DNA of 64,000 nt from the NCBI GenBank assembly GCA_965644295.1, contig CBFFRP010000297.1, positions 806,001-870,000 on the forward strand. The letters run 5' to 3'. Positions 2,406 to 50,691 of this stretch are shown piece after piece. The stretch's first letter is position 1, and each line of letters starts with the position of its first letter. Source of the stretch: Paraphysomonas bandaiensis. Taxonomy: Eukaryota; Protista; Chrysophyceae. Position numbers and translations under genes: made by a program. The notes under the pieces were generated by a model. The model was not told where the DNA came from. It ran no database searches and saw only the letters and a program-made list of their open reading frames with translations.

Positions 2406-5400
2406 ATGAAGAAATTATTAAATATCTTCTCTAGGGAGACTCATGAAACGAGTGGTCGTAAAATCGGATATACCAAATATTTTCTTGGTCTTATAACATG
2501 TTTAACAACGATATTAGCCCTACCTTTGATAAGAATTGAATTAAAGGCGAATAGTATAGAAAGTACAGTTGCTGCAGCTGTTTATTGGGTTGTTGTAAGT
2601 TTTTTTGGGTTTATTATTATAGTATACCCATGGTGGCTCGCAACTTCTAGTAGTCCTATTTATTACAATCGACTTCAGAAGTACACGAAACTTATTGCCT
2701 TTGTAAGCTTCGTACTAGTTGCTGCACGTAGCTTAACCGCACCTGCCGAACCTTTTCAGTATGAAAAGCCTGGGAAGACAACACTTGCTTTTAAACTAGT
2801 ATCTGGATTCTGGTGGATATCCTCTCTATTCGGGTTCCTATTGCTGCTCCCTGTACTCATTCGCAGGGAGAAGTTGTTTAGATCAAAGTCTCTTGCTCTT
2901 TTCACTTTTGTGATACCATATGTAATGGTAATGTTTGCGGGAGTAGTTCTCCACGAGTGGACTGGAAATGGCATGATTACTGCATACAGTCCTCTTGTGC
3001 TTATAGTTCTGTACTACGTTGTGGTATTGCTAGAGGGTCTTGCCAAGCCAAACAAAGGTTCGAAATCCCAATTTGATGAGGCTTATATCATGGTGGCAGG
3101 TCAGATGTTTGAACCCACTGTTGTACTGTTTCATTACTCGTGTAGGTTTTGTACCATTCTGGTTAGGAAGTGTCTTAGGCGGTTCTTTACTGGTATATTC
3201 ATGACTTGTTGCAAACAAGCTATCTGCTTAATATTCTACAATATGCAGGTGCTGGTGAGCACAGTGGGACCACTTGGCACGGTTGTGATATTTGGCGCGT
3301 GGAGAATGCTTATCTTTGTGTTTGAAGTAATATCGGCAGAGACAGGCTCCAGGGCATCCAGAACAGCAGATGGGAGCGTGTTTGCGTTCTGTGCGATATA
3401 CACAGGTACTCGCTGCAAGTTTCATACAGCACTTTTTATGATTTACCTTAGGGGCCACATACGCGGAGTTTATCTTTCTAAGTGTGGTTTTTAATTCGGT
3501 AAAATTTTGGGCGTTGTTAGCGATAGAGGTAATGATGATAGTATTTTGGTATGGCGGGATGATGATTGACATAAACGATTTTGTGGTGGAATACGTTCCG
3601 AGCAACTGCTACTTGCTGCGGATGTTCAAGACCCTGTTTATTAATTTTTACTTCACTCCTTATGAAATTGCACAAGAGGCAGCTAAACGACCAGGATCAC
3701 AGGCGAACGCTGAGATTCAATTGGCACTGATACGCAGTCGCGCAATGGTGGTGCAGATTACGTGGACGACTAATGATATTAAAATGGCATCGGAGTTTCA
3801 GTCTCTTGCTTGTGCTGCTACAGCAGTGGCAGCTGATATCTTCTACAGCTACTACAACGTCGGTGAAGACTTTATTCCGGAAAGTATTCAAACCAAAAGA
3901 GAGCTAATGTATATATACCTTGTCAACCTCGCAGCTTTGTTTTTGGCCCAGGCAATGGCACGACGTCAGCTTAAAAACAAGGTGTGTGCGTTATTTAGCA
4001 ACATTGACTCGAAGTTATATGCGCTGTGTGGATGTAGGTGGGGAATCTCAAGAAAGATATACGACAGGTGGTCGCCCGAGTCGTATCTGAGCGCCGAAAG
4101 GGAGCCCGAGTGTCAATGGAATCCATACACTCAGAGGATAGTCGTGTCTCTGGACTGACCACTAATCCAGCATTCGGTAATCCTGAAAGACTAGAAAGTC
4201 GGACGTCATCTAGAGATTTGGATGTGTCGAGTGGCTCCATGGAGACAGAGAAGCAGAATGACAGATCTTCATTGAAAAACTTCACGAAGATGCTGCCTGA
4301 TCTTCAGGGAATGATGGATCGTCACAAAAGCACATCAGGACAGACTAGGGCTCAGTCTGAAGTTGATGAGGAAGAAGAGGCATTCAATGACCTTTGTAAT
4401 ATTCTTGAAATGACTGCAAAGTTTGCTCCGCCGGAGAAGAAAGAGACATCGGAGAACCGAAGGAGGTCCAGCAACTTCTTATCATATGACTTCTACGGCA
4501 CTGTGGATGATATCCCAGCGGATGAAGATGAATTTGCAGCTGACGATTGGGGTGATGTTGACATTGTTACCAGTGGAGGAGGTGGTCGCCGTATGTCAAT
4601 ATCGTCACCCCCTATGGAGGGGTACTTGAAGAAGCAGAAACCTGGAAGTACGCGGTATCAAAGGCGGTACTTCTTACTCACTTCTCGAAATATGTTGCTT
4701 TACTATAGTGACAAGAGTGATGTTACTGATCATGTCGGCAGTGCTAAGGGTGTCATTGCATTAGCCGATGTAACATCGCTGAATCAATCTTCATCTTCTC
4801 CTTGTGACCTCGAACTCGTCACGCCTAGTAGAGTATATCGCTTGCAGGCTTATACCGTAGATGAAGCAATGATGTGGTACGGTGCATTATATAGTCGAGT
4901 TGGTGGGAAAGGGGATAAAGAGAATAACTCAGATATTAATGTTCGTCTGTTGGAAGAAGGCGGTGGTGAAGGTGTGACGGCTCCTTCTCACATGCGTCGC
5001 GGGTCTATTGGAGTTAGGCGTGCGTCTGCCAGCAAAGACCCTGATATTGCATTATCTGTTACCATCGATGACCTACCTGAGAAACGTGGAATGCTCAAGC
5101 GTAAAAATATGTTTTTTTATCAAGAGAGATGGGTGGAACTGCGGCGTCCAGGGTTATTATCGTGGTACACTAGCTATTCTGAGGTCGAATCTAACCACGA
5201 GACTCATGCAGGCACGATATCTACTTCTGATATTATATCAGTGCAGCAAATTGCATCGAACCAATGTTTCTTCGACGTGGATGTCAAGGGACGCACGTAT
5301 CAGTTCCAGGCAGATTCCGAAGGTTTGGCCAAAGAATGGTGCGAGGCTCTGTCTGCTTGGGTACAACATTATGCCGTGGAAATGGAATTCGCAAGGCACC

Positions 5401-8400
5401 GCGCCGGGTCCACTGTTAGGTTGGTAGAGGATGCAGTTGATGTAGATTGGCTGCGCCGATCTAGTTTTTTTATGGCTGGCCGGAAATCGGAGGATATGGA
5501 TAGAGATAGTTTGGCGATGATGAAATTTAGTCGACGCAATACCCGCCGAGCATCTTTGGTTGTACGTTGTAGCGATGTGGAGAACGAAATTAATGTTGAT
5601 GTATCAAGACTTCCCGAAAGAAAGGGTTGGGTCAGGAAAAAAGGAGGCAGGAACGCTGTATGGCAACGCAGATGGATTCAAATTTCTCAACCTGGCATTC
5701 TGAGTTGGTATGTATCTGACAAGGACGCACTGGAGGGTCAAGAGAAAGCCAAAGGTTCCATCGAGATATGTAACATACTGTCGGTTGAGCAACCCCACAC
5801 AGATCTCTGTTGCATTGATGTTAACGTCAAGGGGCGGACGTATGAGCTCCAGACGTATACTCTCGCAGAGGCCCGCGGATGGTGTGATGACCTAGCTGCC
5901 TGGATGACTTATCACAGCAGTGCCGCCACTCACTGCAGAAGTACCTCTGTGGGCCACTCCTACAGACGGAGTGGAGTACAAAACCGAAATAGTGGACATG
6001 ATTTTTTTAGTGATATCGACGAAACCATCGCATCGTTGCCTGAGAAAAAAGGATATCTAATGAAGAGAGGAGTGGGTCACACCAATTGGCAGCAAAGATG
6101 GTTTGAGCTTATTCGCCCTGGTAAGCTATTGTGGTACAACAGTGAGAGGTCTGCATCCGGTGGACATTCAAAGGCGAAGGGTAAACTGCAGATGCTGGAA
6201 GTACTGTCTGTGGAGTTATCCCCAAGCGAACCTTCTCGCCTCGACATTGATGTTAAAGGGCGTACGTACGAGCTGCAGGCGTTCTCAACAGAGGAAGCTA
6301 AGGAGTGGTTGAGTGTGTTCATTCAGTGGGTAGAGGAAATATCTTTGGCCATTGATGTCAACTCAGCTCAAGCCTTGTCCAAATTTGGTGCTGAATCTGT
6401 TGATATTGCACCTGAAGACGCCCTGATAAAGCGCTCATCATTGGGTTACTTGTCCGGTAAACGTGTTTCCTCAACAGCGGAGTATATGGCGCACATTCAC
6501 AACGATGACTTCAAAGCAAGGGGTGTGCAAGATTTACCAGAGAAGAAAGGGTACATGTTGAAGAAAGGAGGGAACAATGGAACATGGCAGAAGCGTTGGG
6601 TTGAAGTCGTTCAGCCTGGTGACTTTTGCTGGTTCGGAAGCGAGAATGAATCACACCGACGTGAAAAGGTTAAAGGCTCTTTTTCAATGTTTGAGGTTCT
6701 GTCGGTAGATCAGCGCCCTCAGAATTGTGTAAACGTAAGCATAGATGGTCGTACCTACGAATTTCAAATATTTAACAGCGAAGAATATAATGAATGGCTA
6801 CGTGTGTTGACTGCTTGGACTAATTTCTGCTCTCGAAGTATGTCGTCATCAATTGGCGACTCATTGCCCATGGAAGACAAGGTTCACAATGATTATTTTG
6901 ATTCTCTTCCTGAGAAGTCTGGGTTTATGAAGAAGCGGGGGGGTATAGGAAGCACCATTTGGCAACGACGATGGTTTGAGCTACGCCGTCCCGGCATATT
7001 GTCGTGGTTCAACAGTGACGAAGAGGCTAGTCAAGGCCAGTCGAAATTGAAGGGTTCGATTTCCTTGTCAGACGTTCTTATGGTTGCATTGTCGAAAGAT
7101 GACCCCTGTGATATAGACCTAGATGTTAAAGGTCGTACATATCAGCTTCAAACTTACAGTGATGTTGACGCCCGTGGGTGGTGTGATATACTTAATGCGT
7201 GGATGGAATACTACCAGTCCCAGCACGAGGGACAGAAACGTAATACTGATGGTAGTCATCTGTCAGCAAATTGTGGAATTGATAGTAGTGTACCGGTTGA
7301 CTCTGACCACCACAGCAGTAGTAAATCACCACCTCTGGAAGAAAAAAAAGGAGTACTGAAAAAGAAAGGGGGAAGTCATGGTGGCTGGCAGCAGAGGTGG
7401 TGTGAGCTCACTGACCCTGGGGTGTTGTCATACTATGTTAGTGAGAGCGACGCTGCCAATGGACCCGCTAAGGCGAAAGGTTACATTGCTCTACCAGCCG
7501 TGCTAGCGATTCAACGTGCGACTTGTGATACTTGTACTGTAGAAGTAGTTGTCAAGGGCCGTGTTTACGAATTTCAGGCACCGACAGAGAGTGAGGCAAA
7601 TGCATGGTACGCTTGCTTATGTGCTTGGAAAGAATATGCTCGCGAGCATGCGGCATTATTTGACCCGATGAACTTGAAGTTACCATTGCCTCCCGTTGTG
7701 GAGCGTTTAGGTAGTTCCGATTCGTGTGTATCGGAGCCTTTTCCGGATGACATGACAGATCTGCCAGAGCACAGTGGGTTTCTCAAGAAATATGGTGGGT
7801 CGAATCGGAATTCGTTCCAAACACGGTGGTTTTACTTGCGTAAACCCGGTGTACTGGAGTGGTTTGACAGTGATGCTGATGCAGGTGATCCTGATAAAGT
7901 GAAGGGTTCGATTAGATTGGATGATATATTAATGGTTAACCAGTCTAGTGAAGATATATGTTGTATAGATGTTGACTTGAAGGGCTCTACATATCAGTTA
8001 CAAGCCTACAGCGTAGAAGAAGCACAAGAGTGGTATGAAGTCATGCAAAGATGGCTAGAATATATGCTTTCGAAAGAAGCTACTGCTCAAGCTAATGAAA
8101 ATTTACCCCAGAAACTCTCTTTTCGACTATTAAAGTTTACAACAGATTTAAAGTTGAGAACTGCTGCAGAGATGACTCCGCAGGGTACTTCCGAGCGTGA
8201 TACCTTGAGCAAACCCGCGAAAATGTCAGGACAACTGAAGAAGAAAGGTGGTTCCCATGGAAGCTGGCAGCAGAGGTGGTGTGAAATTACCCACCCTGGG
8301 GTGTTGTCGTATTACGGCAGTGAGCGTGACGCAGCCGGTGGATTGTCTAAGGCAAAGGGTTTTATATCTCTGACAGACGTACTCTCTGTGAGCCGCTCCT

Positions 8401-11400
8401 CTAGCGATTCATGTACGATAGATGTTGCTGTGAGAGGCCGTGTGTATGAATTCCAAGCGGCTTCAGTAGATATTGCAGATGAATGGTTGGCATGTGTGGT
8501 AAAGTGGGCAGAGTATGCCTATTTAGATAAGGACTTGTGTGTGGGTATTAGTTCCAGATTTTCTATAGGTAGTGAGTGGTCGTCAGTGTCAAAGCTGGAA
8601 ACTGAAGCACCGAACACCGAAAGCTTCATGGGCTTGACAGAAAAATGTGGTTATGTAAAAAAAATGGGCGGAGGAAGTCAGTGGCAACAGAGGTGGATGG
8701 TTATACAGAGCCCGGGAATACTTTCTTGGTATAGCAGCGAAACAGATGCTAAGCAAGGCCAAGCAAAGGCTAACGGTGCATTGACGCTGTCGGATATCTT
8801 ATCTGTCGAATTGACGAATGGTGATCCATGTAGGTTTGACGTGGACATCAAAGGTCGCACGTATCAGTTCCAGGCATACTCTTCCACTGACGCCAGGGCA
8901 TGGTATGATGTACTTTTGAACTGGACTTCCCAATGCGCTTCGGCTAGAAATACGTATACTATCGGTGACAATAGTTTATCGTTTCGCCGTATATGTACTT
9001 TAGATTCACCCGTTGCTGGAAGTTTATATTCATCAGACAAGCCGTCTAGTACTATATCAGGTGTTTTGAACAAAAAAAGCGGCAGTCATGGTAATTGGCA
9101 GCAGAGGTGGTGTGAGGTCACTGAGCCTGGAATTTTGTCCTATTATGCGAGCAGGGAAGATATGACGGAGGGGTTGTCTAAAGCACGAGGAAGTGTTGTC
9201 CTGACTGATGTTTTATCCGTGAATAAGTCGTCCAGTGATGTCAATGTCATAGAGATAGCTGTCAAGGGTCGAGTTTATGAATTCCAGGGCTGCAGTGAAG
9301 AAGAGTCTGCTCGTTGGCTAGGCGCATTGGTCGACTGGACGAAATATGCATGCCATAACACGAGTGCTTTTGGTGAGTTAAGGACACGTTTATCAGTCAC
9401 AGAGAAAATGCCTATGGAAGTTGAGCAACCTCATGATGAGTCAATGAAGTTGCTGACTGTAAAGCAAGGTTATGTGAAGAAAAAAGGCGGTAAAAATAAT
9501 CAATGGCAGCAGAGATGGCTCGAGCTGCAACACCCTGGAACGTTATCGTGGTATGCTACTGAGGTCGATGCTCAACAAGGCCTGAAGAGTGCAAAAGGCC
9601 ATTTTGCAATATCTGATGTTTTGCTTGTTGAGCTATCGAAGAGTGAACCTTGTAGATTTGACGTGGACGTCAAAGGGCGAACATATCAAATGCAGGCATA
9701 TTCTGAAGAAGAAGCACAGGTGTGGTACGCTGCACTGATGGAGTGGATGCGCTATTTTGCCTCAAGAGATACACTGAATCTAAATCAAGCTGATGAAGCT
9801 AGCGCTGATCGCAATTCTTTTCGTCGCACAAGCTTATTGAGTGGACCTGTTGTGGACAGAGATTCCCAAGATTTCCCTAGACTTAGCTCAAACACTCCCG
9901 AGTTTTTGCAGTTCCAAGATAGTTTACAGTTGGAAAAAATGTCAGGACAGCTGAAGAAGAAGGGTGGTTCCCATGGAAGCTGGCAGCAGAGATGGTGTGA
10001 AATTACCCACCCTGGGGTATTGTCGTATTACGGTAGTGAGCGTGACGCAGCCGGTGGATTGTCTAAGGCAAAGGGTTTTATAACTCTCGGCGATGTTTTA
10101 TCTATAAATCGCTCGTTGGAAGACTCTTGTATAATAGATATAACTGTTAAGGGTCGTGTATATGAATTCCGAGCGAATAATGAAGATATGACTGAACAAT
10201 GGCTCAAAGCACTGACATCATGGACAGAGTACGCGTGCCAGCACAAAGGATTGTTCCCTTCGGATATGCCAAAAAGTTATAGGTCATCGCTTGGAAGGGC
10301 TTCACTATCATCAAATCGGTTGAGTGATTTGTCCCTGGACAATTCATGTGAGCGAGAGTTGTATTGTCCTGTGGGGAAAAAAGGATTCCTCAAGAAAAGA
10401 GGTGGATCCAATGGCAATGTTTGGCAGCGACGGTGGTTTGAAGTTCAATATCCAGGAGAACTCTCATGGTACATCATTGACGGGGCGACGCGAAAATTGA
10501 AGGGGTCAATAATGCTAGCTGATGTTTTGTCAGTGCAAACGTCGCTTAGCGACTCCTGCCGTGTTGATGTTAATGTCAAAGGTCGCACCTATGAACTGCA
10601 GGCTTATGCTGAAGATGATGCCATACAGTGGGCTGATGCATTGACAGAGTGGGTAAAATTCGTACAGCCGGGGCGGTTGTCGCTTAGACATAGTACATTG
10701 ACTATGACAGATTACAAACGGCCAAGCTTGCAAGATATGCCGGAGAAACACGGCCTGATCAAAAAGAAAGGGGGTGTATGGGGAAACTCTTGGCAGCAGA
10801 GGTGGGTAGAGATTCGACGTCCAGGAGTTTTAGTATGGTATTTGAATGAGGATGATGCAAAATACGGCAAATCGAAAGAGAAAGGATCGCTGTTATTGTC
10901 ATCGATTTTATCTGCGGACCAGTCAACCGTATTTCCTGAATGCTTCGATGTAAACGTCAAAGGCAAATCGTTTGAGTTTCAAACAAGCTCCAGTGACGAA
11001 GCGTATCAATGGACTGCAGTTTTAGAGCAATGGGCGGCATACCTGGATCCCAATGCTTTCGAGTCCGATGAATCAGAGTCACCCATGGTGGATGAAAAGT
11101 CGGCAGCAGCTATTACGAAGAAGCCATTCAATGATAGAAATGCTACTTCTCGGGGTCTCTCTAAGAGAATGTCCGATCTACAAACTGTAGACGAGCTAGG
11201 AGAAGATGATTTCAGCGAAACCGACAACGAACTAGAAATAGGACTGCGTGATGTGGATGTATGTGTGGACGACATAATCGGTAATGAAGGCTTGAAGTGT
11301 CCGTCTGATGATCAACGGTTGGCTGAAGAGGACGAAGAGGTACAGTTAATACTACATGAAATTGTCGATAAAGTTGATGAGGATCACACACAAACATTGG

Positions 11401-12446
11401 TTCGTGAGGAGTGCCGTCTTGTGCTAGATGATATTTTGAATAAGATAGTAACATCTGTGGCGAGTGACGCATGTTTAGTGCCGACAAACGAGGAAAACCT
11501 AGAGATCACCGATGATCAATCTGATTCGAAAATCTATAGCTCTGAAATGTCAACTGATGCTATTGTAAATGATACCGCCTTTTCGCGAAGTGCTGGACAG
11601 GATACAGATATGCATAAGGAAGCGTCCATTAATATCGACTCCCCTTCAGACAAAGCGTCATACCCCCTCGTCCACTCAACAGTGTCAGATGAGATTTGTG
11701 AGGTACCGCTTGTGTCAGGTGAAAGTGAAAATGGTAATGGGAACCCAATTTCTACAGCTAGTGGTAACTCAGTTATCAGAAGCAGCACGACCAATGAGGG
11801 TGAACTGCCCTCGACGACCTCTCCCACGATTGAGGGATTGTATGAGGCTGTTGAAGCGAGTCCCAGCCATGGCCAAAGTAATGTTGTATCCACAGTGCCG
11901 GACAGTGGTTACAGCTGTGATGATGAAATTCCGACTGACCTGAGTACCTCTGATCTGAAGTCATCACACTCCTTGAGTCGCCTGTTTAGGGGCACTGACG
12001 GTGATGGTAGCGGAGTATACAAACGTTTGTCATCAGGGAACTCATTCGGTTCGGGCACTGGTGGCGATGACTATGTTGTAGTCAAGCAGCAAGACGCAGA
12101 GAATCAACTGCGAACTAAGTTGTCGCGGGAGAGCTCAGTGATTCCTAAGGCTTGGGACCCTGACCTGGAGGACATGGATTCAGTGCAGTACAATGAGGTA
12201 TGTGTTGAAGAAGAAGTGATAGAAACAAGAACTCGGAGAGCATCGGACTGTGCGCACAGGGAATACATGAAACTAAACTCCCAAACCGATGACGATGACT
12301 TCATGAATAAGTTAAGAACGAATTCATATCAGGATCTCAACAAGAAGTTTTGGGTCAAGCATAAGTGGTACTTGACTGCTGTTGTGTGTTATGTTACACT
12401 ACATGTTCTGCATGTAACGTCCTTTATTATAAGAGAGCGGGAGTAG
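2406..12446 (+). CDS. Giant polytopic membrane protein: ~11-12 N-terminal TM helices, 15 tandem PH domains, acidic low-complexity region, hydrophobic C-terminus (~3,278 aa, 5 exons)
   Basis: GT-AG introns 3100-3145, 3193-3248, 3406-3451 and 3982-4037 join ORFs 2406, 3484 and 4038 in frame. The 8.4-kb last exon has 15 repeats of GxLxKxG...WxxRW...L.(W/Y)(Y/F)...KG.I...GR.Y.(F/L)QA...W...L..W, the PH signature. Confidence 0.85.
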
Positions 12447-16869: not shown

Positions 16870-19598
16870 CTAGGTATACGTCCCAAAATATATCGGATAC
16901 ACTATATTTTCTTTGCTTTGCACAAACTTTTCAACTCGTAGTACAGCTTTTAGTGTCTCTTTTTCTTCCACATGTGTGTTGGTTCCAAGTACGTCGTAAC
17001 AATCAGCGGACTGAACATAAAGAGCATCTTGAAGTTCGAACGAATCGGCGCACTGCTGATCATATATCACCGCCAATATTTTTACACTACACGGAGGAAG
17101 TGACGAAAAATATAACTTGCATTGGGACTTCTCAACTCTCCGCGTAATATCATGAATTATAGTTGACGTCATCATTCCGTCACTAGAATACATATAAGGA
17201 GTTATAACCTTTAACCTCGAGTTGACAGTCAAATTCAAAGACAAAACTGATATACATTCACCAAAGTGTGATGCACATTCACCGGTCCAATTAGCCACCG
17301 AGCTATCACTGTCTCCACTTAAACTGCATGCATATAGTACATTAATTCCATTTCCTCGCATAGCATAAACAACTGCAGTATCAGAGGCACATATCGGTGA
17401 CACCGCTACCCCATGAGGATTCGCGCCCATGCTCACACTCCGCAATAGTGATACCAGTTGAACCTCAGCGGAATTGATATCTACACCGCAAATACTTGAA
17501 CGAGAGCATTTTCTCTCAGTGTTAGGGTGTTTCGTCAATGTTATGGCGCGATTAGAGTAAGTATGCAAGTAATAAGATTGATCTTGAATTACTGACGGAT
17601 TAAGTCGCACCACAGTAACTATGTATTCTCCTGCATCTAAGTGCATCTCCAACGGGAACGAGTTCCTAGTTGGGAAGGTAAACACGGCAGCTATACAGTC
17701 GTATGCACCGGAAGGAGTCATTCGGTGTATGAGTAGTGAAAGGTCGCTATACCAATAGCTTTTCGCAGTGCTGTCACCCGCGAATCCCCCACGTTTCGAC
17801 GCCTGTACGAGGCTAATATACAAATGTACGGGCTCTAAGGCAGGTGGAATAAGCAATCGAAACCAAGACACTGCAGAGATTCCGCGAGTAGATCGACTTA
17901 TATCATCCCTCACACACACCACGCGCCAGTCCCCTGTTGAGTATGCCTTGCACACATCCACTGTCGCGTACCTCCTCAGAAAGTCGTGATACGTAATCCA
18001 GAATGTGCCATCATTAGATGTCTGATTCTGTGGACACAACATCGCTCTTAAACGACTAGTCCACAGGGTCGAATGCGACGAAAACGTGCCCTTCCATTCT
18101 ACCTTTCCCCAGGGGTTACGAATTCGAAGCAGTCGAAGAACACCAGAGTTTAATACCTCTTCTCTACACTCTTCTTCAGCAGACTTTGACATTTTATTTA
18201 CAGATCGACCACCTGAATTCTCTGTAGACTGGCTCTGAAAATAGCTGCGTATCGATACTTGCTCACCAACGCTAACTCCGACGATCTCTCTTACGTCGAG
18301 AATGGAATATGCGTGATTTCCAACTATACCTTCTCCGGAGAAGTCTGTCGAACACCCCATCGGAAAACCAGCCGAGCGGTATTGCATTAGGGTTTGCCAC
18401 GTCTTTTCAGAGTCGAATCCAGGGCTAGCTAAGTGGATGGCTTCACAAGGACATCCTGTTATTTCAGAACGCATTAGATCAGCGCAAGGCAAGATATAAT
18501 AGTGCATGCATCTGCATCACGTTTTCTATAGACTCAGAAAGTGATTACCTGTGAGGTCAAATAGTGCTTCCGTTATGAAGCCACCACTAATAGCCTTATA
18601 ACAGTTATGAGCCTTGGCGTATGCCTTCTCCAGCAAAGGTACCCACAGCTGCGATTGCTTGGATCGCGAATATACAAGTCTCTGTACAGCTCCTCGCTTT
18701 CGCTTTCCTCTTGACTGGATATCAGAATGACAAGGCAAGAAACAATCAACAGAGATGGTTTTCCAAGCGCCCGCTAGGAAAAAACAAAATCGTTGTAAGC
18801 CTGATGGTGTAAGAGCTTTATCAACCACAACACGGCTTAGTAAATCATTGCGTTCACAGAGGACAACAACAGCACTCAGAAACCAACAATCACCAACACC
18901 TCCTTGTATAATATCATCTACATATAGACAAGTTAAGAAATATTATATGAGGAGATTGACTATGTATATCAACCTGCTTTAAACCCATTCGATCCTACTA
19001 ATTTCCATCCTTGTGTAAGAGTAAACGGTTCCCACTGTATACACTCTGATCTCATCTGTTGTGGTCTCTGATCTGCCCATGAAAATGATGAACATCCTTT
19101 TATTGGACATGTATAATAGTAGCGTCCTTGATTAGCTCCTGCTTTATATACTTGACGTCGTATCATGGGCTTATGACACAAGCATTGAGGTATCTCATGG
19201 GAGGAGCATACAGGATGGCCATCAATACTTGTATGATCACATGGAAATGTAGGATCTTTCTTAATCTCATCATTATGATGATAGATAAGTGTATGTATAC
19301 TTAAAGTAGATTGTTTTCTATTCATATGATGAGATTGTGTATGTGTATGTATAGGTGTATGTGTATGTGTATTATCACTATGAGACGGTGATGGTGTATG
19401 TGTACGTGTGTTATCACTATGAGATGGTGTATGTGTATGTGTACGTGTGTTATCACTATGAGATGGTGTATGTGTATATGTATATGATTGTATTGATGGT
19501 GTATTCCTAATCTCATTTTTGATATGAAGTGGAAGTTGTGACCATGTATCAGCATCAATACCATACGGAGGGGTGTCACTTGAAGTCAACGTATTCAT
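16870..19598 (-). CDS. Atypical calpain (CysPc plus C2-like region) with N-terminal UBM-like motif and zf-GRF, internal NLS and PIP box
   Basis: Introns 18973-18918 and about 18548-18456. Catalytic triad motifs DIIQGGVGDCWFLS, GNHAYSIL, IRNPWG, plus LLEKAYAK and GTFWI. zf-GRF CLCH...GANQGRYYYTCP..GCSSFSWAD; GIDADTWSQLPLHIKNEI; RGKRKR; QVSIRSYF. Confidence 0.9.
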
Positions 19599-48027: not shown

Positions 48028-50691
48028 ATGAGATTATATACACGGATATTCATCACTATACATCTCTATATACTTACATCTATCGTATGTAAGAATAGTG
48101 CAGGTGAATTAGGTGATGGATACACTTCTGATCAATCTAGAGATGGATTTTTTGCTGAATTAGATAATAATGCTAATGGGCAGATTAGTTTAGATGAGTT
48201 ACGAGAGGTAACAGTCACACGTATATATATATATATACATGTATACTAACAGATAGGGTTACTATAGTATATTGAAGATACAGGAGGAAATTCATTAGAT
48301 GAACAGAGTGAAATTCAAAATGCTGTTTCAAGTGTTTTGAATAATTTAGATGGAAATAAAGATATGATCTTAAAGAAGGATGACTTGGCAGTGTACTGGC
48401 AGTCATTAGGTCAGACACACACCCTTCAATGTTTTATAACATCTCTAATTATATATACAGCATCATTGCTTCCGACGGACGAAGTTGCTGAGTGGGTAGC
48501 ACACTCACAGCTGATGCCGGAATCCATTGTAGCAAGTTTCATAGAGAATGGTATTCATAATATACATTTAGTAACAAAGTAATGCGACTGTTGTGTAGAA
48601 ATAACGGGCTACGATTTTCCAGAGTTAATTGAGAATGATGGATATCTTTTGGAACAGGAACTCGAGATCAGAAGGATGACCATCAAACGTCGTCTTTTGA
48701 GGGGAATGAAAATGAAGTTGTTAGGAATGGGTCGCCCTCCTCTTTCTCCTACACCTCCTGCAGTAGTATGGACTGATACTTCGAAGTGCTTCACACATAT
48801 TGCGGTTGAATGGGAGACTGCAAATAATGAAGCGGAAGGGAACAAAGACGTTTATCCAGTCCATAAATATCTCCTTCAGCGACAAGATTTGGATTACACC
48901 AGCACTCATCCTGGTAAGCCTCGATGGATAACTGTTTACGATGGCATGGATACACGTGCTTCAGACACCATACTTGTACCTCCTGAGTTGCCCAATTCCC
49001 TTCTATCCCTCCCTGTGACGCAGACCTACCGCCTTTCCAGCTGGAATGTCATAGGGAGGTCGGATTATATGTACCTGAAGCTGGATTTGCCTCGGCCTAC
49101 TGAGGTATCATCAGATAGTTGTGATGAGCTGGCATTTACCCAATTGTCTCCAATCATTTCACCTGTCGCGGAACTCAGGCGCACTAGTCACCATAATTCG
49201 CATTCGTCTAATACCTCTACAGATATCAGCGAACAAATTGAAAACTCCGAGACTCCGACCGATTTGTCGGTCTACACTTCTGTCATGACTCATGCCACCT
49301 CACCAAATGGAAAGCAGGCATCCAACTGGACTGCCAAGGAAGTTCTTTTAGGTGTATATAGATTGTTTTCTGTGGCAATAGGTCTCATTTTTCGAGGATC
49401 GTCGTGGCTAATGTCTCTGGTTTATGTGTTGTCGATTCTTGCAACGTTTACAATATCCTTAATTCGTCTAAGAAACATGAAGAAATATAGTGATTCTGAC
49501 CAGAGAAGTGCGACTACTTCCCGGCGTCAGAGCGCTGTTAAAGGGGAAAGTATGTGGGGAAGTGTTGTCACTTGTTGTCAAATGTCCTTGCTGAAGCCCT
49601 CACTTGCGTATTTGTGTCCAATTGTGTATAAATATTCCCGTGATTTTGGTAACACTCGTCCATGGATCCAGCCACTGACCAACTATGTGTGTTTAGTCAC
49701 GAAGTCTCTGTTAACAACTGTTTCAAGAGATTCTTCTCCTGCTCCATTGACGAAACAACCGTCTTCGCGGTCAAATGCTACGCAATCGGCTCGACATCCA
49801 TCAGGAAACTCCAGTGGATACTCATCTTGTGATGACGATGGATCATTCTATGAAGATGCGTTGCAGAATGACACGTCTGGTGACTTGAGAGATGAAGATG
49901 ATGACCATAAATTCTGTTCTGTGTGTAAAGTAAAATTCAAATTTAAACCACATAAAATGAAATGGAGGAAACGACACCACTGCTGTAAATGTCTCAATGT
50001 GTTTTGTAGTCGGTGTGGTGTAGTTCGTCATTCTTCAATGTTGCAGTGTCCTGTGCCCGGGAGCTGTACCTGTATGCGGTGTGAAGGATTTGCTTCTACT
50101 GGACAGCTGCAGTGTCAGCCGGCGATGGGAATCGGAATGGTCAGTCGGGCAGCCATGCAGCTACACAATCATTCCGTAGAAACGCATCCCTCAAACGTTG
50201 ACCCGAAGGTGAGGAGCGACGCAACCAAGAGCTATTCACTTTCCAGCAATCGATCTCTCTCCATGGATGTGCAAGATTCATTATCTCCTCCAAAGCCTAA
50301 AAAAGACAACCCTGTTTCTAGGCCAGCTTCTCGTGGATTCAATGAACAGGAGGAACTAATTCAGAATAGCAATGGAGTGAAGAAAGAGAAGAAAGGACAC
50401 AAGAAAGGAAGTCGAAGTTTTGGCTCTTTTAAAGAGCTTAGTAGTATGTGGGTACCGAAACACCAATCTGACGGAAGCACAACGCATGTTAGTGGTAGAC
50501 CCCCTAAAGTCCCTCTACCCAACGTGCCGAGTGCGTGGCCGCCAGTTCCGATCTTACGGCGAAGGCCTAAGACTAGCCCTGCAACTACCCCAGAACGATT
50601 CGACTCCTCTCCCTCACCTGAGCATATATCTGAAACTCCTGTGGTGCCACCCGTTTCTACTCCCTCGTCTGGTATATCGCTGCCTCATTAG
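48028..50691 (+). CDS. STIM-like protein: signal peptide, EF-hand pair + SAM, FN3, TM, cytosolic FYVE-type zinc finger, basic/Pro-rich tail (~834 aa)
   Basis: Introns 48208-48267, 48410-48460 and 48551-48598 keep the frame. DNNANGQISLDE (EF loop); DLAVYWQSLASLLPTDEVAEWVAHSQLMPE...ITGYDFPELI...IKRRLL...LLGMG (STIM-type EF-SAM); IAVEW..HKYLLQR..WITVYDG..YRLSSWNVIGRS (FN3); TM WLMSLVYVLSILATFTISLI; CSVC..F...KRHHCCKC..VFCSRC (FYVE-like). Confidence 0.8.

What the first reader, a model, noticed from the sequence alone, without database searches (positions are those of the whole stretch)
16870..19598. Calpain equipped like a replication-coupled DNA-repair protease (UBM + zf-GRF + NLS + PIP box)
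Seen in sequence: an intact calpain triad (Cys in QGGVGDCW, His in NHAY, Asn in RNPW). The N-terminus has GIDADTWSQLPLHIKNEI and a zf-GRF. A basic insert RGKRKR lies within the protease core, and a loop inserted between the catalytic His and Asn contains QVSIRSYF (18261-18238), a canonical QxxIxxYF PIP box. Established: zf-GRF domains bind ssDNA (APE2, NEIL3, TOP3A); the D...LP..I..E pattern is the UBM of Rev1/Pol iota; PIP boxes bind PCNA; SPRTN combines a protease with DNA-, ubiquitin- and PCNA-binding modules to cut DNA-protein crosslinks. Inference: this calpain may be a convergent, cysteine-protease analogue of SPRTN/Wss1/FAM111A, recruited to ubiquitinated PCNA at ssDNA. The zf-GRF-calpain fusion may already be catalogued in protists; the four motifs together are the new point.
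Basis: partly seen in the sequence, partly recalled or inferred. Interest (0 to 1): 0.85.

Follow-up and report, generated by a model that had tools for sequence, protein, structure and literature searches.

The report
Calpain with PCNA, ubiquitin, ssDNA modules
This expressed gene of a chrysophyte alga encodes a calpain protease carrying a ubiquitin-binding motif, a single-stranded-DNA zinc finger and a conserved PCNA-docking motif, so this long-catalogued but unstudied calpain family probably works at DNA replication or repair sites.

Summary
The gene lies on the minus strand in three exons (19598-16870) and encodes 859 aa. Spliced transcript contigs confirm both introns and keep the PIP loop intact.

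- **Fold and finger:** Pfam confirms Peptidase_C2 and zf-GRF. The triad is C219/H379/N445.
- **UBM:** a profile of the N-terminal motif hits Pol iota UBM2 (E 2.4e-9), then REV1 and HUWE1 UBMs.
- **PIP box:** QVSIRSYF opens an insert between His and Asn that is specific to this clade. Of 134 representatives (<50% identical) with the insert, 81 match all four PIP positions and 28 match three, almost always at His+18. The motif is spread across the whole zf-GRF clade and is lost in one nested subclade.
- **PCNA model:** the motif docks in the canonical PCNA groove (score 0.71, best control 0.02; the mark was reached by 51 of 78 solved complexes and 2 of 108 mismatched pairs).
- **Ubiquitin modules:** relatives carry UBA-like, RanBP2/NZF, UIM or UBZ-like modules in place of the UBM.

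Limits: the Zf_GRF-CysPc architecture was already published in 2012. The basic patch is only partly conserved. The genome keeps Wss1- and SprT-like proteases, so this calpain does not replace them. No binding or substrate has been shown, so the SPRTN-like role remains an inference.

The parts
16870..19598 (-). Whole coding region of the zf-GRF calpain: 3 exons, 859 aa, stop included
   Evidence: Gene model. Both introns are confirmed by spliced contigs of runs X1, X2, X4 and X5. A MMETSP Paraphysomonas transcript protein is 98% identical over the C-terminal 440 aa.
19509..19562 (-). UBM, a ubiquitin-binding motif of the Pol iota/REV1 type, aa 13-30, with the Leu-Pro core at aa 22-23
   Evidence: A profile of 8 orthologue motifs hits Pol iota UBM2 (2KWV, E 2.4e-9), REV1 (5VZM, 1e-3) and HUWE1 (2MUL, 1.8e-3). 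The equivalent region of the orthologue model forms two helices.
19326..19484 (-). Low-complexity Thr/His/Ser-rich repeat linker, aa 39-91
   Evidence: Sequence. An in-frame 27-nt length difference is seen in transcript contigs of runs X1 and X2. The equivalent linker has pLDDT below 50 in the orthologue model.
19218..19256 (-). First segment of the calpain core (D..FP....SIDG), lying upstream of the inserted zinc finger
   Evidence: Family consensus F.D..FPP...SIDGR, compared with calpain-11 LFEDPLFPAEPSSLG.
19071..19184 (-). zf-GRF zinc ribbon, aa 139-176, nested in the calpain PC1 subdomain
   Evidence: Pfam PF06839, E 2.9e-9, 37.3 bits against a cut-off of 25.9.
18918..18973 (-). Intron 1, 56 nt, GT-AG
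   Evidence: Joint 18917|18974 in contigs of four runs.
18883..18906 (-). Catalytic Cys219 motif QGGVGDCW
   Evidence: Invariant in the alignment of 22 orthologues.
18691..18711 (-). Basic cluster RGKRKRG (NLS-like) in a variable loop of PC1
   Evidence: A basic cluster occurs in the same loop in 29 of 72 clade members and in 0 of 18 calpains with a short His-Asn loop.
18456..18548 (-). Intron 2, 93 nt, GT-AG
   Evidence: Joint 18454|18548 (the cut can shift by one base) in contigs of X1, X2 and X4.
18304..18321 (-). Catalytic His379 motif GNHAYS
   Evidence: invariant.
18142..18279 (-). Clade-specific insert between His and Asn, aa 391-436
   Evidence: His-to-Asn distance is 44-112 residues in zf-GRF-clade members and 19-25 in the other calpains of the first search; further short-loop rows lie in the nested subclade that lost the motif. 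pLDDT is about 47-58 across model residues 61-90.
18238..18261 (-). PIP box QVSIRSYF, aa 397-404
   Evidence: Matches Q-x-x-[ILM]-x-x-[FY]-[FY]. The motif is at His+18 in 63 of 68 matching relatives. Q12, I15, Y18 and F19 of the loop peptide touch PCNA residues 40, 43-47, 124-129, 232-234 and 250-257 in the complex model.
18106..18126 (-). Catalytic Asn445 motif RIRNPWG
   Evidence: invariant.
16873..17900 (-). C-terminal region with two beta-sandwich domains of the calpain domain III / C2-like type (approximate borders)
   Evidence: The AF2 model of exon 3 shows strands across model residues about 177-310 and 350-488. The orthologue model aligns to m-calpain including domain III and to the distal C2-like domain of calpain-7, 2QFE.

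Best explanation
This is an expressed non-classical calpain of the Zf_GRF-CysPc clade from a Paraphysomonas-like chrysophyte.

Shown here:
- An intact Cys-His-Asn calpain core followed by two calpain-type beta-sandwich domains.
- A bona fide UBM at the N-terminus.
- A zf-GRF zinc ribbon nested in the first core subdomain.
- A canonical PIP box at the start of a flexible, clade-specific insert between the catalytic His and Asn.

Inferred mechanism:
- The PIP box docks the enzyme on PCNA.
- The UBM, or the UBA, NZF, UIM or UBZ module that replaces it in relatives, reads ubiquitin on PCNA or on a marked substrate.
- The zf-GRF holds single-stranded DNA, as it does in APE2, NEIL3 and TOP3A.
- The protease is thereby concentrated at stalled or damaged replication forks. 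There it cuts protein obstacles such as DNA-protein crosslinks or ubiquitin-marked replisome or chromatin proteins.

In function it would parallel SPRTN/Wss1 and FAM111A, but with a cysteine-protease engine. It would act alongside the Wss1- and SprT-like proteases that this genome also encodes, not instead of them.
For: Domains: Pfam finds zf-GRF and Peptidase_C2, and the triad is intact.

Expression: correctly spliced transcript contigs, including one from a polyA metatranscriptome, keep the PIP loop.

UBM: the motif profile hits only UBMs at the top (Pol iota 2.4e-9, REV1 1e-3, HUWE1 1.8e-3). The orthologue model shows a two-helix element there.

PIP box:
- Of 134 representatives (<50% mutual identity) with a long insert, 81 match all four PIP positions and 28 match three. 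The consensus is [VLI]-G-x-Q-x-K-[LIVM]-T-D-[FY]-F, followed by variable low-complexity sequence.
- The offset is His+18 in 63 of 68. The background rate of the pattern elsewhere in these proteins is 2e-4 per residue.
- The motif is spread over all main branches of the zf-GRF clade (SH-aLRT 97) and is absent from one nested subclade.
- It lies in a low-pLDDT insert and forms a short helix.

PCNA complex model: run with a chrysophyte PCNA 86% identical to this genome's PCNA over the exon used as query. The score is 0.71 against a best control of 0.02. The mark was reached by 51 of 78 solved complexes and 2 of 108 mismatched pairs. The runs agree in at least 56% of contacts and the partner's pLDDT is at least 48. 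Contacts are Q12/I15/Y18/F19 with the hydrophobic pocket, the interdomain connector loop and the C-terminus of PCNA.

Ubiquitin modules in relatives:
- One to three UBMs in 23 of the 181 sequences scanned.
- UBA_4 above the Pfam cut-off.
- N-terminal RanBP2/NZF fingers with the T-F...hydrophobic signature.
- UIM.
- Weak CUE and UBZ4-like matches.

Established knowledge: APE2 combines a PIP box with a zf-GRF, NEIL3 combines an NZF with zf-GRFs (PMC9561275, PMC9732815), and FAM111A and SPRTN are PCNA-linked proteases (PMC7067828, PMC9240642).
Against: - No binding, localisation or substrate was measured; all evidence is sequence and modelling.
- The complex score may reflect the model's memory of the many solved PIP-PCNA complexes. 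It shows likeness, not that this copy binds. The PCNA used came from a relative, not from this genome.
- The motif directly follows a core beta-strand, and its Gly and Gln are over 90% conserved, so part of the conservation could be structural.
- The basic NLS-like patch is present in only 29 of 72 relatives.
- The genome keeps WLM and SprT-like proteases, so there is no gap to fill.
- One relative carries a C-terminal Smr domain, which is also found in RNA-quality-control nucleases.
- About a quarter of clade members lost the motif.
Confidence: 0.5

Rival explanations
1. The enzyme is recruited to PCNA and ubiquitin as above, but it is a regulatory protease rather than a crosslink-repair protease. 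It would make limited cuts in PCNA-bound or ubiquitylated replication factors, for example to unload or switch polymerases, licensing factors or clamp partners during S phase or after damage.
For: It rests on the same recruitment evidence. From general knowledge, calpains typically make limited, modulatory cuts rather than degrading their substrates. The genome already has Wss1- and SprT-like proteases for bulk crosslink proteolysis.
Against: No substrate is known. The zf-GRF suggests that ssDNA context matters, which fits damage or stalled forks better than routine regulation.
Confidence: 0.2
2. The PIP motif mainly controls the protease itself. As a PIP degron it would have the calpain destroyed on chromatin-bound PCNA by CRL4-Cdt2 in S phase, restricting its activity to other cell-cycle phases.
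For: A large subclade has the high-affinity T-D pair inside the PIP box, in 23 of 68 matching sequences.
Against: The defining basic residue four positions after the box accompanies T-D in only 2 of those 23. The window's motif has neither T-D nor that basic residue.
Confidence: 0.05
3. The conserved G-x-Q-x-x-[ILV]-x-x-[FY]-F element is a structural or autoregulatory part of the calpain core and does not bind PCNA. It might pack on the protease or gate the active site. The enzyme would then work elsewhere, for example in ubiquitin-linked RNA or ribosome quality control or in cytokinesis, with the zf-GRF binding RNA.
For: The motif directly follows a core strand at a fixed offset. One relative has a C-terminal Smr domain. 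A 2026 review proposes a general cytokinesis role for calpains (PMC13413365).
Against: pLDDT is low at and after the motif. The sequence after it is hypervariable in length and composition. The consensus matches the PIP definition at all four key positions. The loop peptide is modelled into the PCNA pocket far above the controls. A nested subclade lost the motif while keeping the core, so the fold does not require it.
Confidence: 0.2

Closest known systems
Zf_GRF-CysPc calpains (Zhao et al. 2012, PMC3563603; Rawlings 2015, PMC4631099)
   Same: The architecture and clade are the same: a zf-GRF plus a calpain core, reported from SAR, Hacrobia and Plantae. The window's protein falls inside this clade.
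   Different: Those papers catalogue the domain combination only. In the papers found, none mentions the UBM, the PIP-box insert, PCNA, the swapping of ubiquitin-binding modules or a DNA-repair role.
SPRTN / Wss1 (replication-coupled DNA-protein-crosslink metalloproteases; PMC9240642)
   Same: The same logic of a protease joined to a DNA-binding module, a ubiquitin- or SUMO-binding module and, in SPRTN, a PIP box.
   Different: The catalytic fold is unrelated: a zinc metalloprotease against a papain-like cysteine protease. SPRTN uses a UBZ and its own DNA-binding regions, not a UBM and a zf-GRF. This genome has Wss1- and SprT-like genes as well.
FAM111A (PCNA-interacting trypsin-like protease at replication forks; PMC7067828)
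   Same: A protease with a PIP box and an ssDNA-binding region that acts on protein obstacles at forks.
   Different: FAM111A is a serine protease restricted to mammals, and it has no UBM or zf-GRF.
APE2 and NEIL3 (zf-GRF DNA-repair enzymes; PMC9732815, PMC9561275)
   Same: APE2 combines a PIP box with a zf-GRF. NEIL3 combines a ubiquitin-binding NZF with zf-GRFs. The same targeting modules occur in this calpain family.
   Different: Their catalytic domains act on DNA (a nuclease and a glycosylase), whereas this one acts on protein.
Calpain-15 / SOL-type calpains (Zn-CysPc)
   Same: The nearest calpains outside the clade in the searches. They carry N-terminal RanBP2-type zinc fingers, as some zf-GRF calpains do.
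   Different: They have a short His-Asn hairpin of 19-25 residues without a PIP insert, and no zf-GRF.

Membership tests
Calpain (peptidase family C2) | Match to the Peptidase_C2 profile above the curated cut-off | tested here: met
   Exon 2 scores 104.1 bits and exon 3 scores 80.2 bits against a cut-off of 23.8.
Calpain (peptidase family C2) | [quoted passage not shown] | tested here: met
   C219, H379 and N445; invariant in 22 orthologues.
Calpain (peptidase family C2) | Calpain protease-core fold | tested here: met
   The orthologue AF2 model matches m-calpain (E 4e-27) and calpain-1 and calpain-3 cores (TM by target about 0.8). The window's own exon 3 was modelled at mean pLDDT 76.
Calpain (peptidase family C2) | Calcium dependence | not tested
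   There is no penta-EF-hand domain. The core calcium-site residues were not systematically mapped.
Zf_GRF-CysPc calpain clade | zf-GRF domain together with the calpain core | tested here: met
   PF06839, E 2.9e-9. The same pair is found in most hits.
Zf_GRF-CysPc calpain clade | Groups with the other zf-GRF calpains in a tree of the core | tested here: met
   A clade of 97 rows is separated from SOL-like and classical rows with SH-aLRT 97. This is the quick tree, because the careful search did not finish.
UBM (ubiquitin-binding motif of Pol iota / REV1 / HUWE1) | Sequence match to known UBMs, including the central Leu-Pro | tested here: met
   The motif profile against PDB sequences gives Pol iota UBM2 at E 2.4e-9, REV1 at 1e-3 and HUWE1 at 1.8e-3. 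D, W, L, P and E are invariant in 8 orthologues.
UBM (ubiquitin-binding motif of Pol iota / REV1 / HUWE1) | Helix-turn-helix around the Leu-Pro | tested here: met
   The orthologue model has helices at 21-26 and 29-43, with pLDDT about 64-74. The window's own N-terminus was not modelled.
UBM (ubiquitin-binding motif of Pol iota / REV1 / HUWE1) | Binds ubiquitin | not testable with these tools
PIP box (PCNA-interacting peptide) | Q-x-x-[ILM]-x-x-[FY]-[FY] | tested here: met
   QVSIRSYF at aa 397-404.
PIP box (PCNA-interacting peptide) | Lies in an accessible, flexible region | tested here: met
   pLDDT is about 47-58 at and after the motif in the window model and 46-72 in the orthologue model. 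The insert after it varies in length and is low in complexity.
PIP box (PCNA-interacting peptide) | Conserved in orthologues | tested here: met
   81 of 134 long-insert representatives match 4 of 4 positions and 28 match 3 of 4, at the same offset. The motif is spread across the clade.
PIP box (PCNA-interacting peptide) | Docks in the PCNA hydrophobic pocket under the interdomain connector loop | tested here: met
   This is a model only. The score is 0.71 against a best control of 0.02; the mark was reached by 51 of 78 solved complexes and 2 of 108 mismatched pairs. The runs agree in at least 56% of contacts and partner pLDDT is at least 48. Contacts involve PCNA residues 40, 43-47, 124-129, 232-234 and 250-257. 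The result may come from memory of solved complexes.
PIP degron (CRL4-Cdt2 substrates) | T-D at positions 5-6 of the box and a basic residue four positions after it | tested here: not met
   The window has R-S at positions 5-6 and Ser four positions after the box. In the family, T-D occurs in 23 of 68 but with the basic residue in only 2.
SPRTN / Wss1 metalloproteases | SprT or WLM zinc-metalloprotease domain with HExxH | tested here: not met
   The protein is a Cys-His-Asn calpain. SprT-like and WLM genes lie elsewhere in the genome. The resemblance is functional only.
Classical monopartite NLS | K-[KR]-x-[KR] cluster, conserved and exposed | tested here: inconclusive
   KRKR is present at aa 280-283. 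A basic cluster occurs in the same loop in 29 of 72 relatives and in 0 of 18 short-loop calpains. Localisation was not tested.

The most novel reading that the evidence does not exclude
The whole Zf_GRF-CysPc family is an ancient class of replication- and repair-coupled protease built on a calpain engine. It is widespread in stramenopiles, alveolates, haptophytes, cryptophytes and green and red algae. PCNA (through the PIP box in the His-Asn insert), ubiquitin (through interchangeable UBM, UBA, NZF, UIM or UBZ modules) and ssDNA (through the nested zf-GRF) would aim it at protein obstacles on DNA. It would stand beside the metalloproteases SPRTN/Wss1, the serine protease FAM111A and the aspartic protease Ddi1.
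Probability: 0.35. Interest if true: 0.85.

Novelty: new variant of a known kind. Interest (0 to 1): 0.72.

Why it matters
Proteases that clear protein obstacles from DNA were recognised only in the last decade and are known mainly from animals and fungi. Little is known about how the large protist and algal lineages handle such damage.

The zf-GRF calpain family has been listed in domain surveys since 2012 without any proposed function. This gene and its relatives carry a conserved PIP box, a true UBM or another ubiquitin reader, and an ssDNA finger. That gives the family its first concrete and easily testable hypothesis, and it would extend calpain biology from the cytoplasm and membranes to the replication fork. 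It would also be a case of convergent evolution, in which the same targeting kit as in SPRTN, FAM111A, APE2 and NEIL3 is attached to a different catalytic engine.

Tried and rejected
- **Hidden intron in the PIP loop.** The GTGAGC...TTTCAG stretch is 32 nt, which is out of frame, and no joint appears there in the spliced contigs. Rejected.
- **PIP degron reading.** Rejected for this gene, and not general in the family.
- **"Genomes with this gene lack SPRTN/Wss1".** Rejected for this genome. A UBL-WLM protein and two SprT-like genes are present.
- **Taxonomy of metagenomic relatives from cluster names.** The names gave nothing useful.
- **Earlier scan notes.** None bears on this gene.
- **Plasmodium calpain link.** A 2026 review says Plasmodium calpains share the Zf_GRF-CysPc layout (PMC13413365). 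The primary paper (PMC2629787) is not held and no sequence was at hand, so the link was not checked and is not used as evidence.
- **Full-length window protein.** It could not be submitted for folding because it is spliced. An orthologue (P0013) and the window's exon 3 were folded instead.
- **Careful maximum-likelihood tree.** The search did not finish in the time allowed, so the quick tree is reported.
Full report
**1. What is there**

The region holds one gene on the minus strand. Reading the sequence and assembling it gives three exons: 19598-18974, 18917-18549 and 18455-16870. The introns are 56 and 93 nt, both GT-AG, and the product is 859 aa.

Public transcript assemblies confirm the model. 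Contigs of 2443 and 2240 nt from runs X1 and X2, plus shorter ones from X4 and from a polyA metatranscriptome (X5), skip exactly 18918-18973 and 18456-18548. Across exon 3 they run unbroken.

The closest database protein is a MMETSP transcript product of the chrysophyte genus Paraphysomonas, 98% identical over the C-terminal 440 aa. The organism is therefore a stramenopile alga or flagellate of that kind.

**2. The observation**

Every reported motif is at the stated place:
- Cys219 in QGGVGDCW, His379 in GNHAYS and Asn445 in RIRNPWG.
- The N-terminal GIDADTWSQLPLHIKNEI, aa 13-30.
- The zf-GRF, aa 139-176.
- RGKRKRG, aa 278-284.
- QVSIRSYF, aa 397-404, at 18261-18238.

Pfam confirms Zn_ribbon_GRF (E 2.9e-9) and Peptidase_C2 in exons 2 and 3.

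One anatomical correction is needed. The zinc finger is nested inside the first segment of the calpain core. The family consensus F.D..FPP...SIDGR lies upstream of the finger and W.RF....DI.QG.VGDCW lies downstream of it. In calpain-11 the two stretches are adjacent.

**3. The N-terminal motif is a UBM**

A profile of the motif from eight orthologues was searched against all PDB chain sequences. The top hits were DNA polymerase iota UBM2 (2KWV, E 2.4e-9), REV1 (5VZM, 1e-3), HUWE1 (2MUL, 1.8e-3) and Pol iota UBM1 (2KHU, 0.014). The Leu-Pro pair that defines UBMs is invariant. In the AlphaFold model of orthologue P0013 the region forms two short helices.

**4. The PIP box is conserved, exposed and fits PCNA in a model**

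*Insert.* In the first homology search, zf-GRF-type relatives have 44-112 residues between the catalytic His and Asn. The other calpains found there have 19-25. The insert opens with G-x-Q-x-x-[ILM]-x-x-[FY]-[FYL].

*Conservation.* A profile search of 1.84 billion representatives gave 150 proteins that are at most 50% identical to each other. These were pooled with the first hits.
- Of 134 sequences with a long insert, 81 match all four PIP positions and 28 match three.
- The consensus is [VLI]-G-x-Q-x-K-[LIVM]-T-D-[FY]-F, followed by Ser/Lys/Gly-rich sequence of variable length.
- The motif starts 18 residues after the His in 63 of 68 cases.
- The same pattern occurs elsewhere in these proteins at 2e-4 per residue, or 5e-5 for the strict form.

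*Phylogeny.* In a tree of the core with the insert removed, the zf-GRF clade (97 rows, SH-aLRT 97) carries the motif on all its main branches. One nested subclade of 30 rows (support 95) has lost it, having either a short loop or a different GNVSGF-type insert. The simplest reading is an ancestral motif kept across deep divergence and lost once or a few times. The loss also shows that the fold does not require it.

*Exposure.* The motif lies in a low-confidence stretch and forms a short helix in both models. In the window's exon 3 model these are residues 65-72, with pLDDT about 50-58, and residues 76-88 fall below 50. The orthologue model shows the same pattern.

*Complex model.*
- A 45-aa loop peptide (window 18160-18294) was modelled with a chrysophyte PCNA. 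That PCNA is 86% identical to this genome's PCNA over the exon used as query.
- The score was 0.71 in all three runs against a best control of 0.02.
- The mark was reached by 51 of 78 solved complexes and 2 of 108 mismatched pairs. The runs agree in at least 56% of contacts, and the partner's pLDDT is at least 48.
- Contacts run from Q12, I15, Y18 and F19 of the peptide to PCNA residues 40, 43-47, 124-129, 232-234 and 250-257. From general knowledge, this is the classical PIP pocket under the interdomain connector loop.
- The tool warns that such a pass may come from memory of solved PIP-PCNA complexes. It shows likeness, not binding.

**5. Ubiquitin reading is a family trait**

Relatives that lack the UBM carry other ubiquitin-binding modules in the same N-terminal position:
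- UBA_4 above the Pfam cut-off (P0032, P0035, P0196, P0278; P0259 falls just below it).
- RanBP2/NZF fingers with the T-F...hydrophobic signature (P0179, P0189, P0191, P0253, P0256).
- UIMs (P0269).
- A weak CUE match (P0241) and a weak UBZ4-like CPVC...H...H finger (P0028).
- Several proteins have two or three UBMs, as REV1 and Pol iota do.

Such interchange of unrelated modules with one shared ligand is good comparative evidence that ubiquitin binding is selected for.

**6. Weaker points**

- The basic cluster sits in a variable loop of the core. A comparable cluster is present in 29 of 72 clade members and in none of 18 short-loop calpains. This is suggestive of a drifting NLS or a DNA-contact patch, but it is not conserved strictly.
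- The T-D pair that marks high-affinity PIP boxes is common in one subclade, in 23 of 68. The basic residue that would make a CRL4-Cdt2 degron accompanies it in only 2, and the window has neither.
- The genome has a UBL-WLM (Wss1-type) gene, a second WLM locus and two SprT-like genes. The calpain is therefore an addition, not a substitute.

**7. Rest of the protein**

After the core come two beta-sandwich domains. The orthologue model aligns with m-calpain through domain III and with the distal C2-like domain of calpain-7. A Thr/His-rich repeat linker (aa 39-91) separates the UBM from the core. It differs by an in-frame 27 nt between strains.

**8. Comparison with what is known**

[quoted passage not shown] It is mentioned again in 2015 and 2026 (PMC4631099, PMC13413365). 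Searches for calpain with PIP box and PCNA, calpain with DNA-protein crosslinks, and zf-GRF with a protease found no paper that proposes the motifs or the role discussed here. That covers only the open-access library searched.

The targeting kit matches that of known fork-associated enzymes:
- APE2 has a PIP box and a zf-GRF.
- NEIL3 has an NZF and zf-GRFs (PMC9561275).
- SPRTN has a PIP box and a UBZ (PMC9240642).
- FAM111A has a PIP box and an ssDNA-binding region (PMC7067828).

The protein is a member of the calpain family and of the zf-GRF calpain clade. It is not a member of the SPRTN/Wss1 or FAM111 families and can only be said to work like them.

**9. Verdict**

The module assignments are supported, and for the UBM and the PIP box they are considerably strengthened. 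The step from "equipped for PCNA, ubiquitin and ssDNA" to "cuts DNA-protein crosslinks" remains an inference.

I put about 0.7 on real PCNA binding and about 0.75 on ubiquitin binding. I put about 0.5 on the overall picture of a fork- or repair-site protease, and about 0.35 on the family being a general crosslink- or obstacle-clearing protease class.

Noticed in passing
window 19326-19484 (-): The Thr/His/Ser repeat linker (THTHTPSHSDN units, encoded by ACACATACA-like DNA) is 27 nt shorter, in frame, in transcript contigs of runs X1 and X2. The linker length therefore varies between strains.
   Followed up: partly
G000:C150:92842-96171 (L001) and G000:C119:242779-246045 (L002): The genome has two PCNA loci, each split by short introns. 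They may be alleles or haplotigs, or true paralogues.
   Followed up: no
P0196 (metagenomic relative, 1188 aa): This zf-GRF calpain has an N-terminal UBA_4 and a C-terminal Smr nuclease domain (PF01713, E 3.8e-8), so a protease and a nuclease share one chain with the same targeting kit.
   Followed up: no
P0242, P0245, P0249, P0261, P0264, P0269, P0277, P0279, P0283, P0290, P0298 and similar relatives: A nested subclade of long proteins (about 1000-1300 aa) replaced the PIP insert by a conserved 45-47 residue insert, [DE]FF...GNVSGFT.[FY]DG. At least one member (P0269) has UIMs. The function of this alternative insert is unknown.
   Followed up: partly
G000:C15:112521-115937 (L007): A Wss1-type protein with an N-terminal ubiquitin-like domain and a WLM metalloprotease domain (HELAHNEH) is encoded in one 464-aa open frame.
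   Followed up: partly
G000 loci L011-L015: There are five further zf-GRF matches in the genome besides this gene. They were not identified, and APE2, TOP3A and NEIL3 orthologues are candidates.
   Followed up: no
window 2406-12446 and 48028-50691: Other first-stage notes exist on this window, for a membrane protein with many PH domains and a STIM-like protein with a FYVE finger. They are unrelated to this gene.
   Followed up: no
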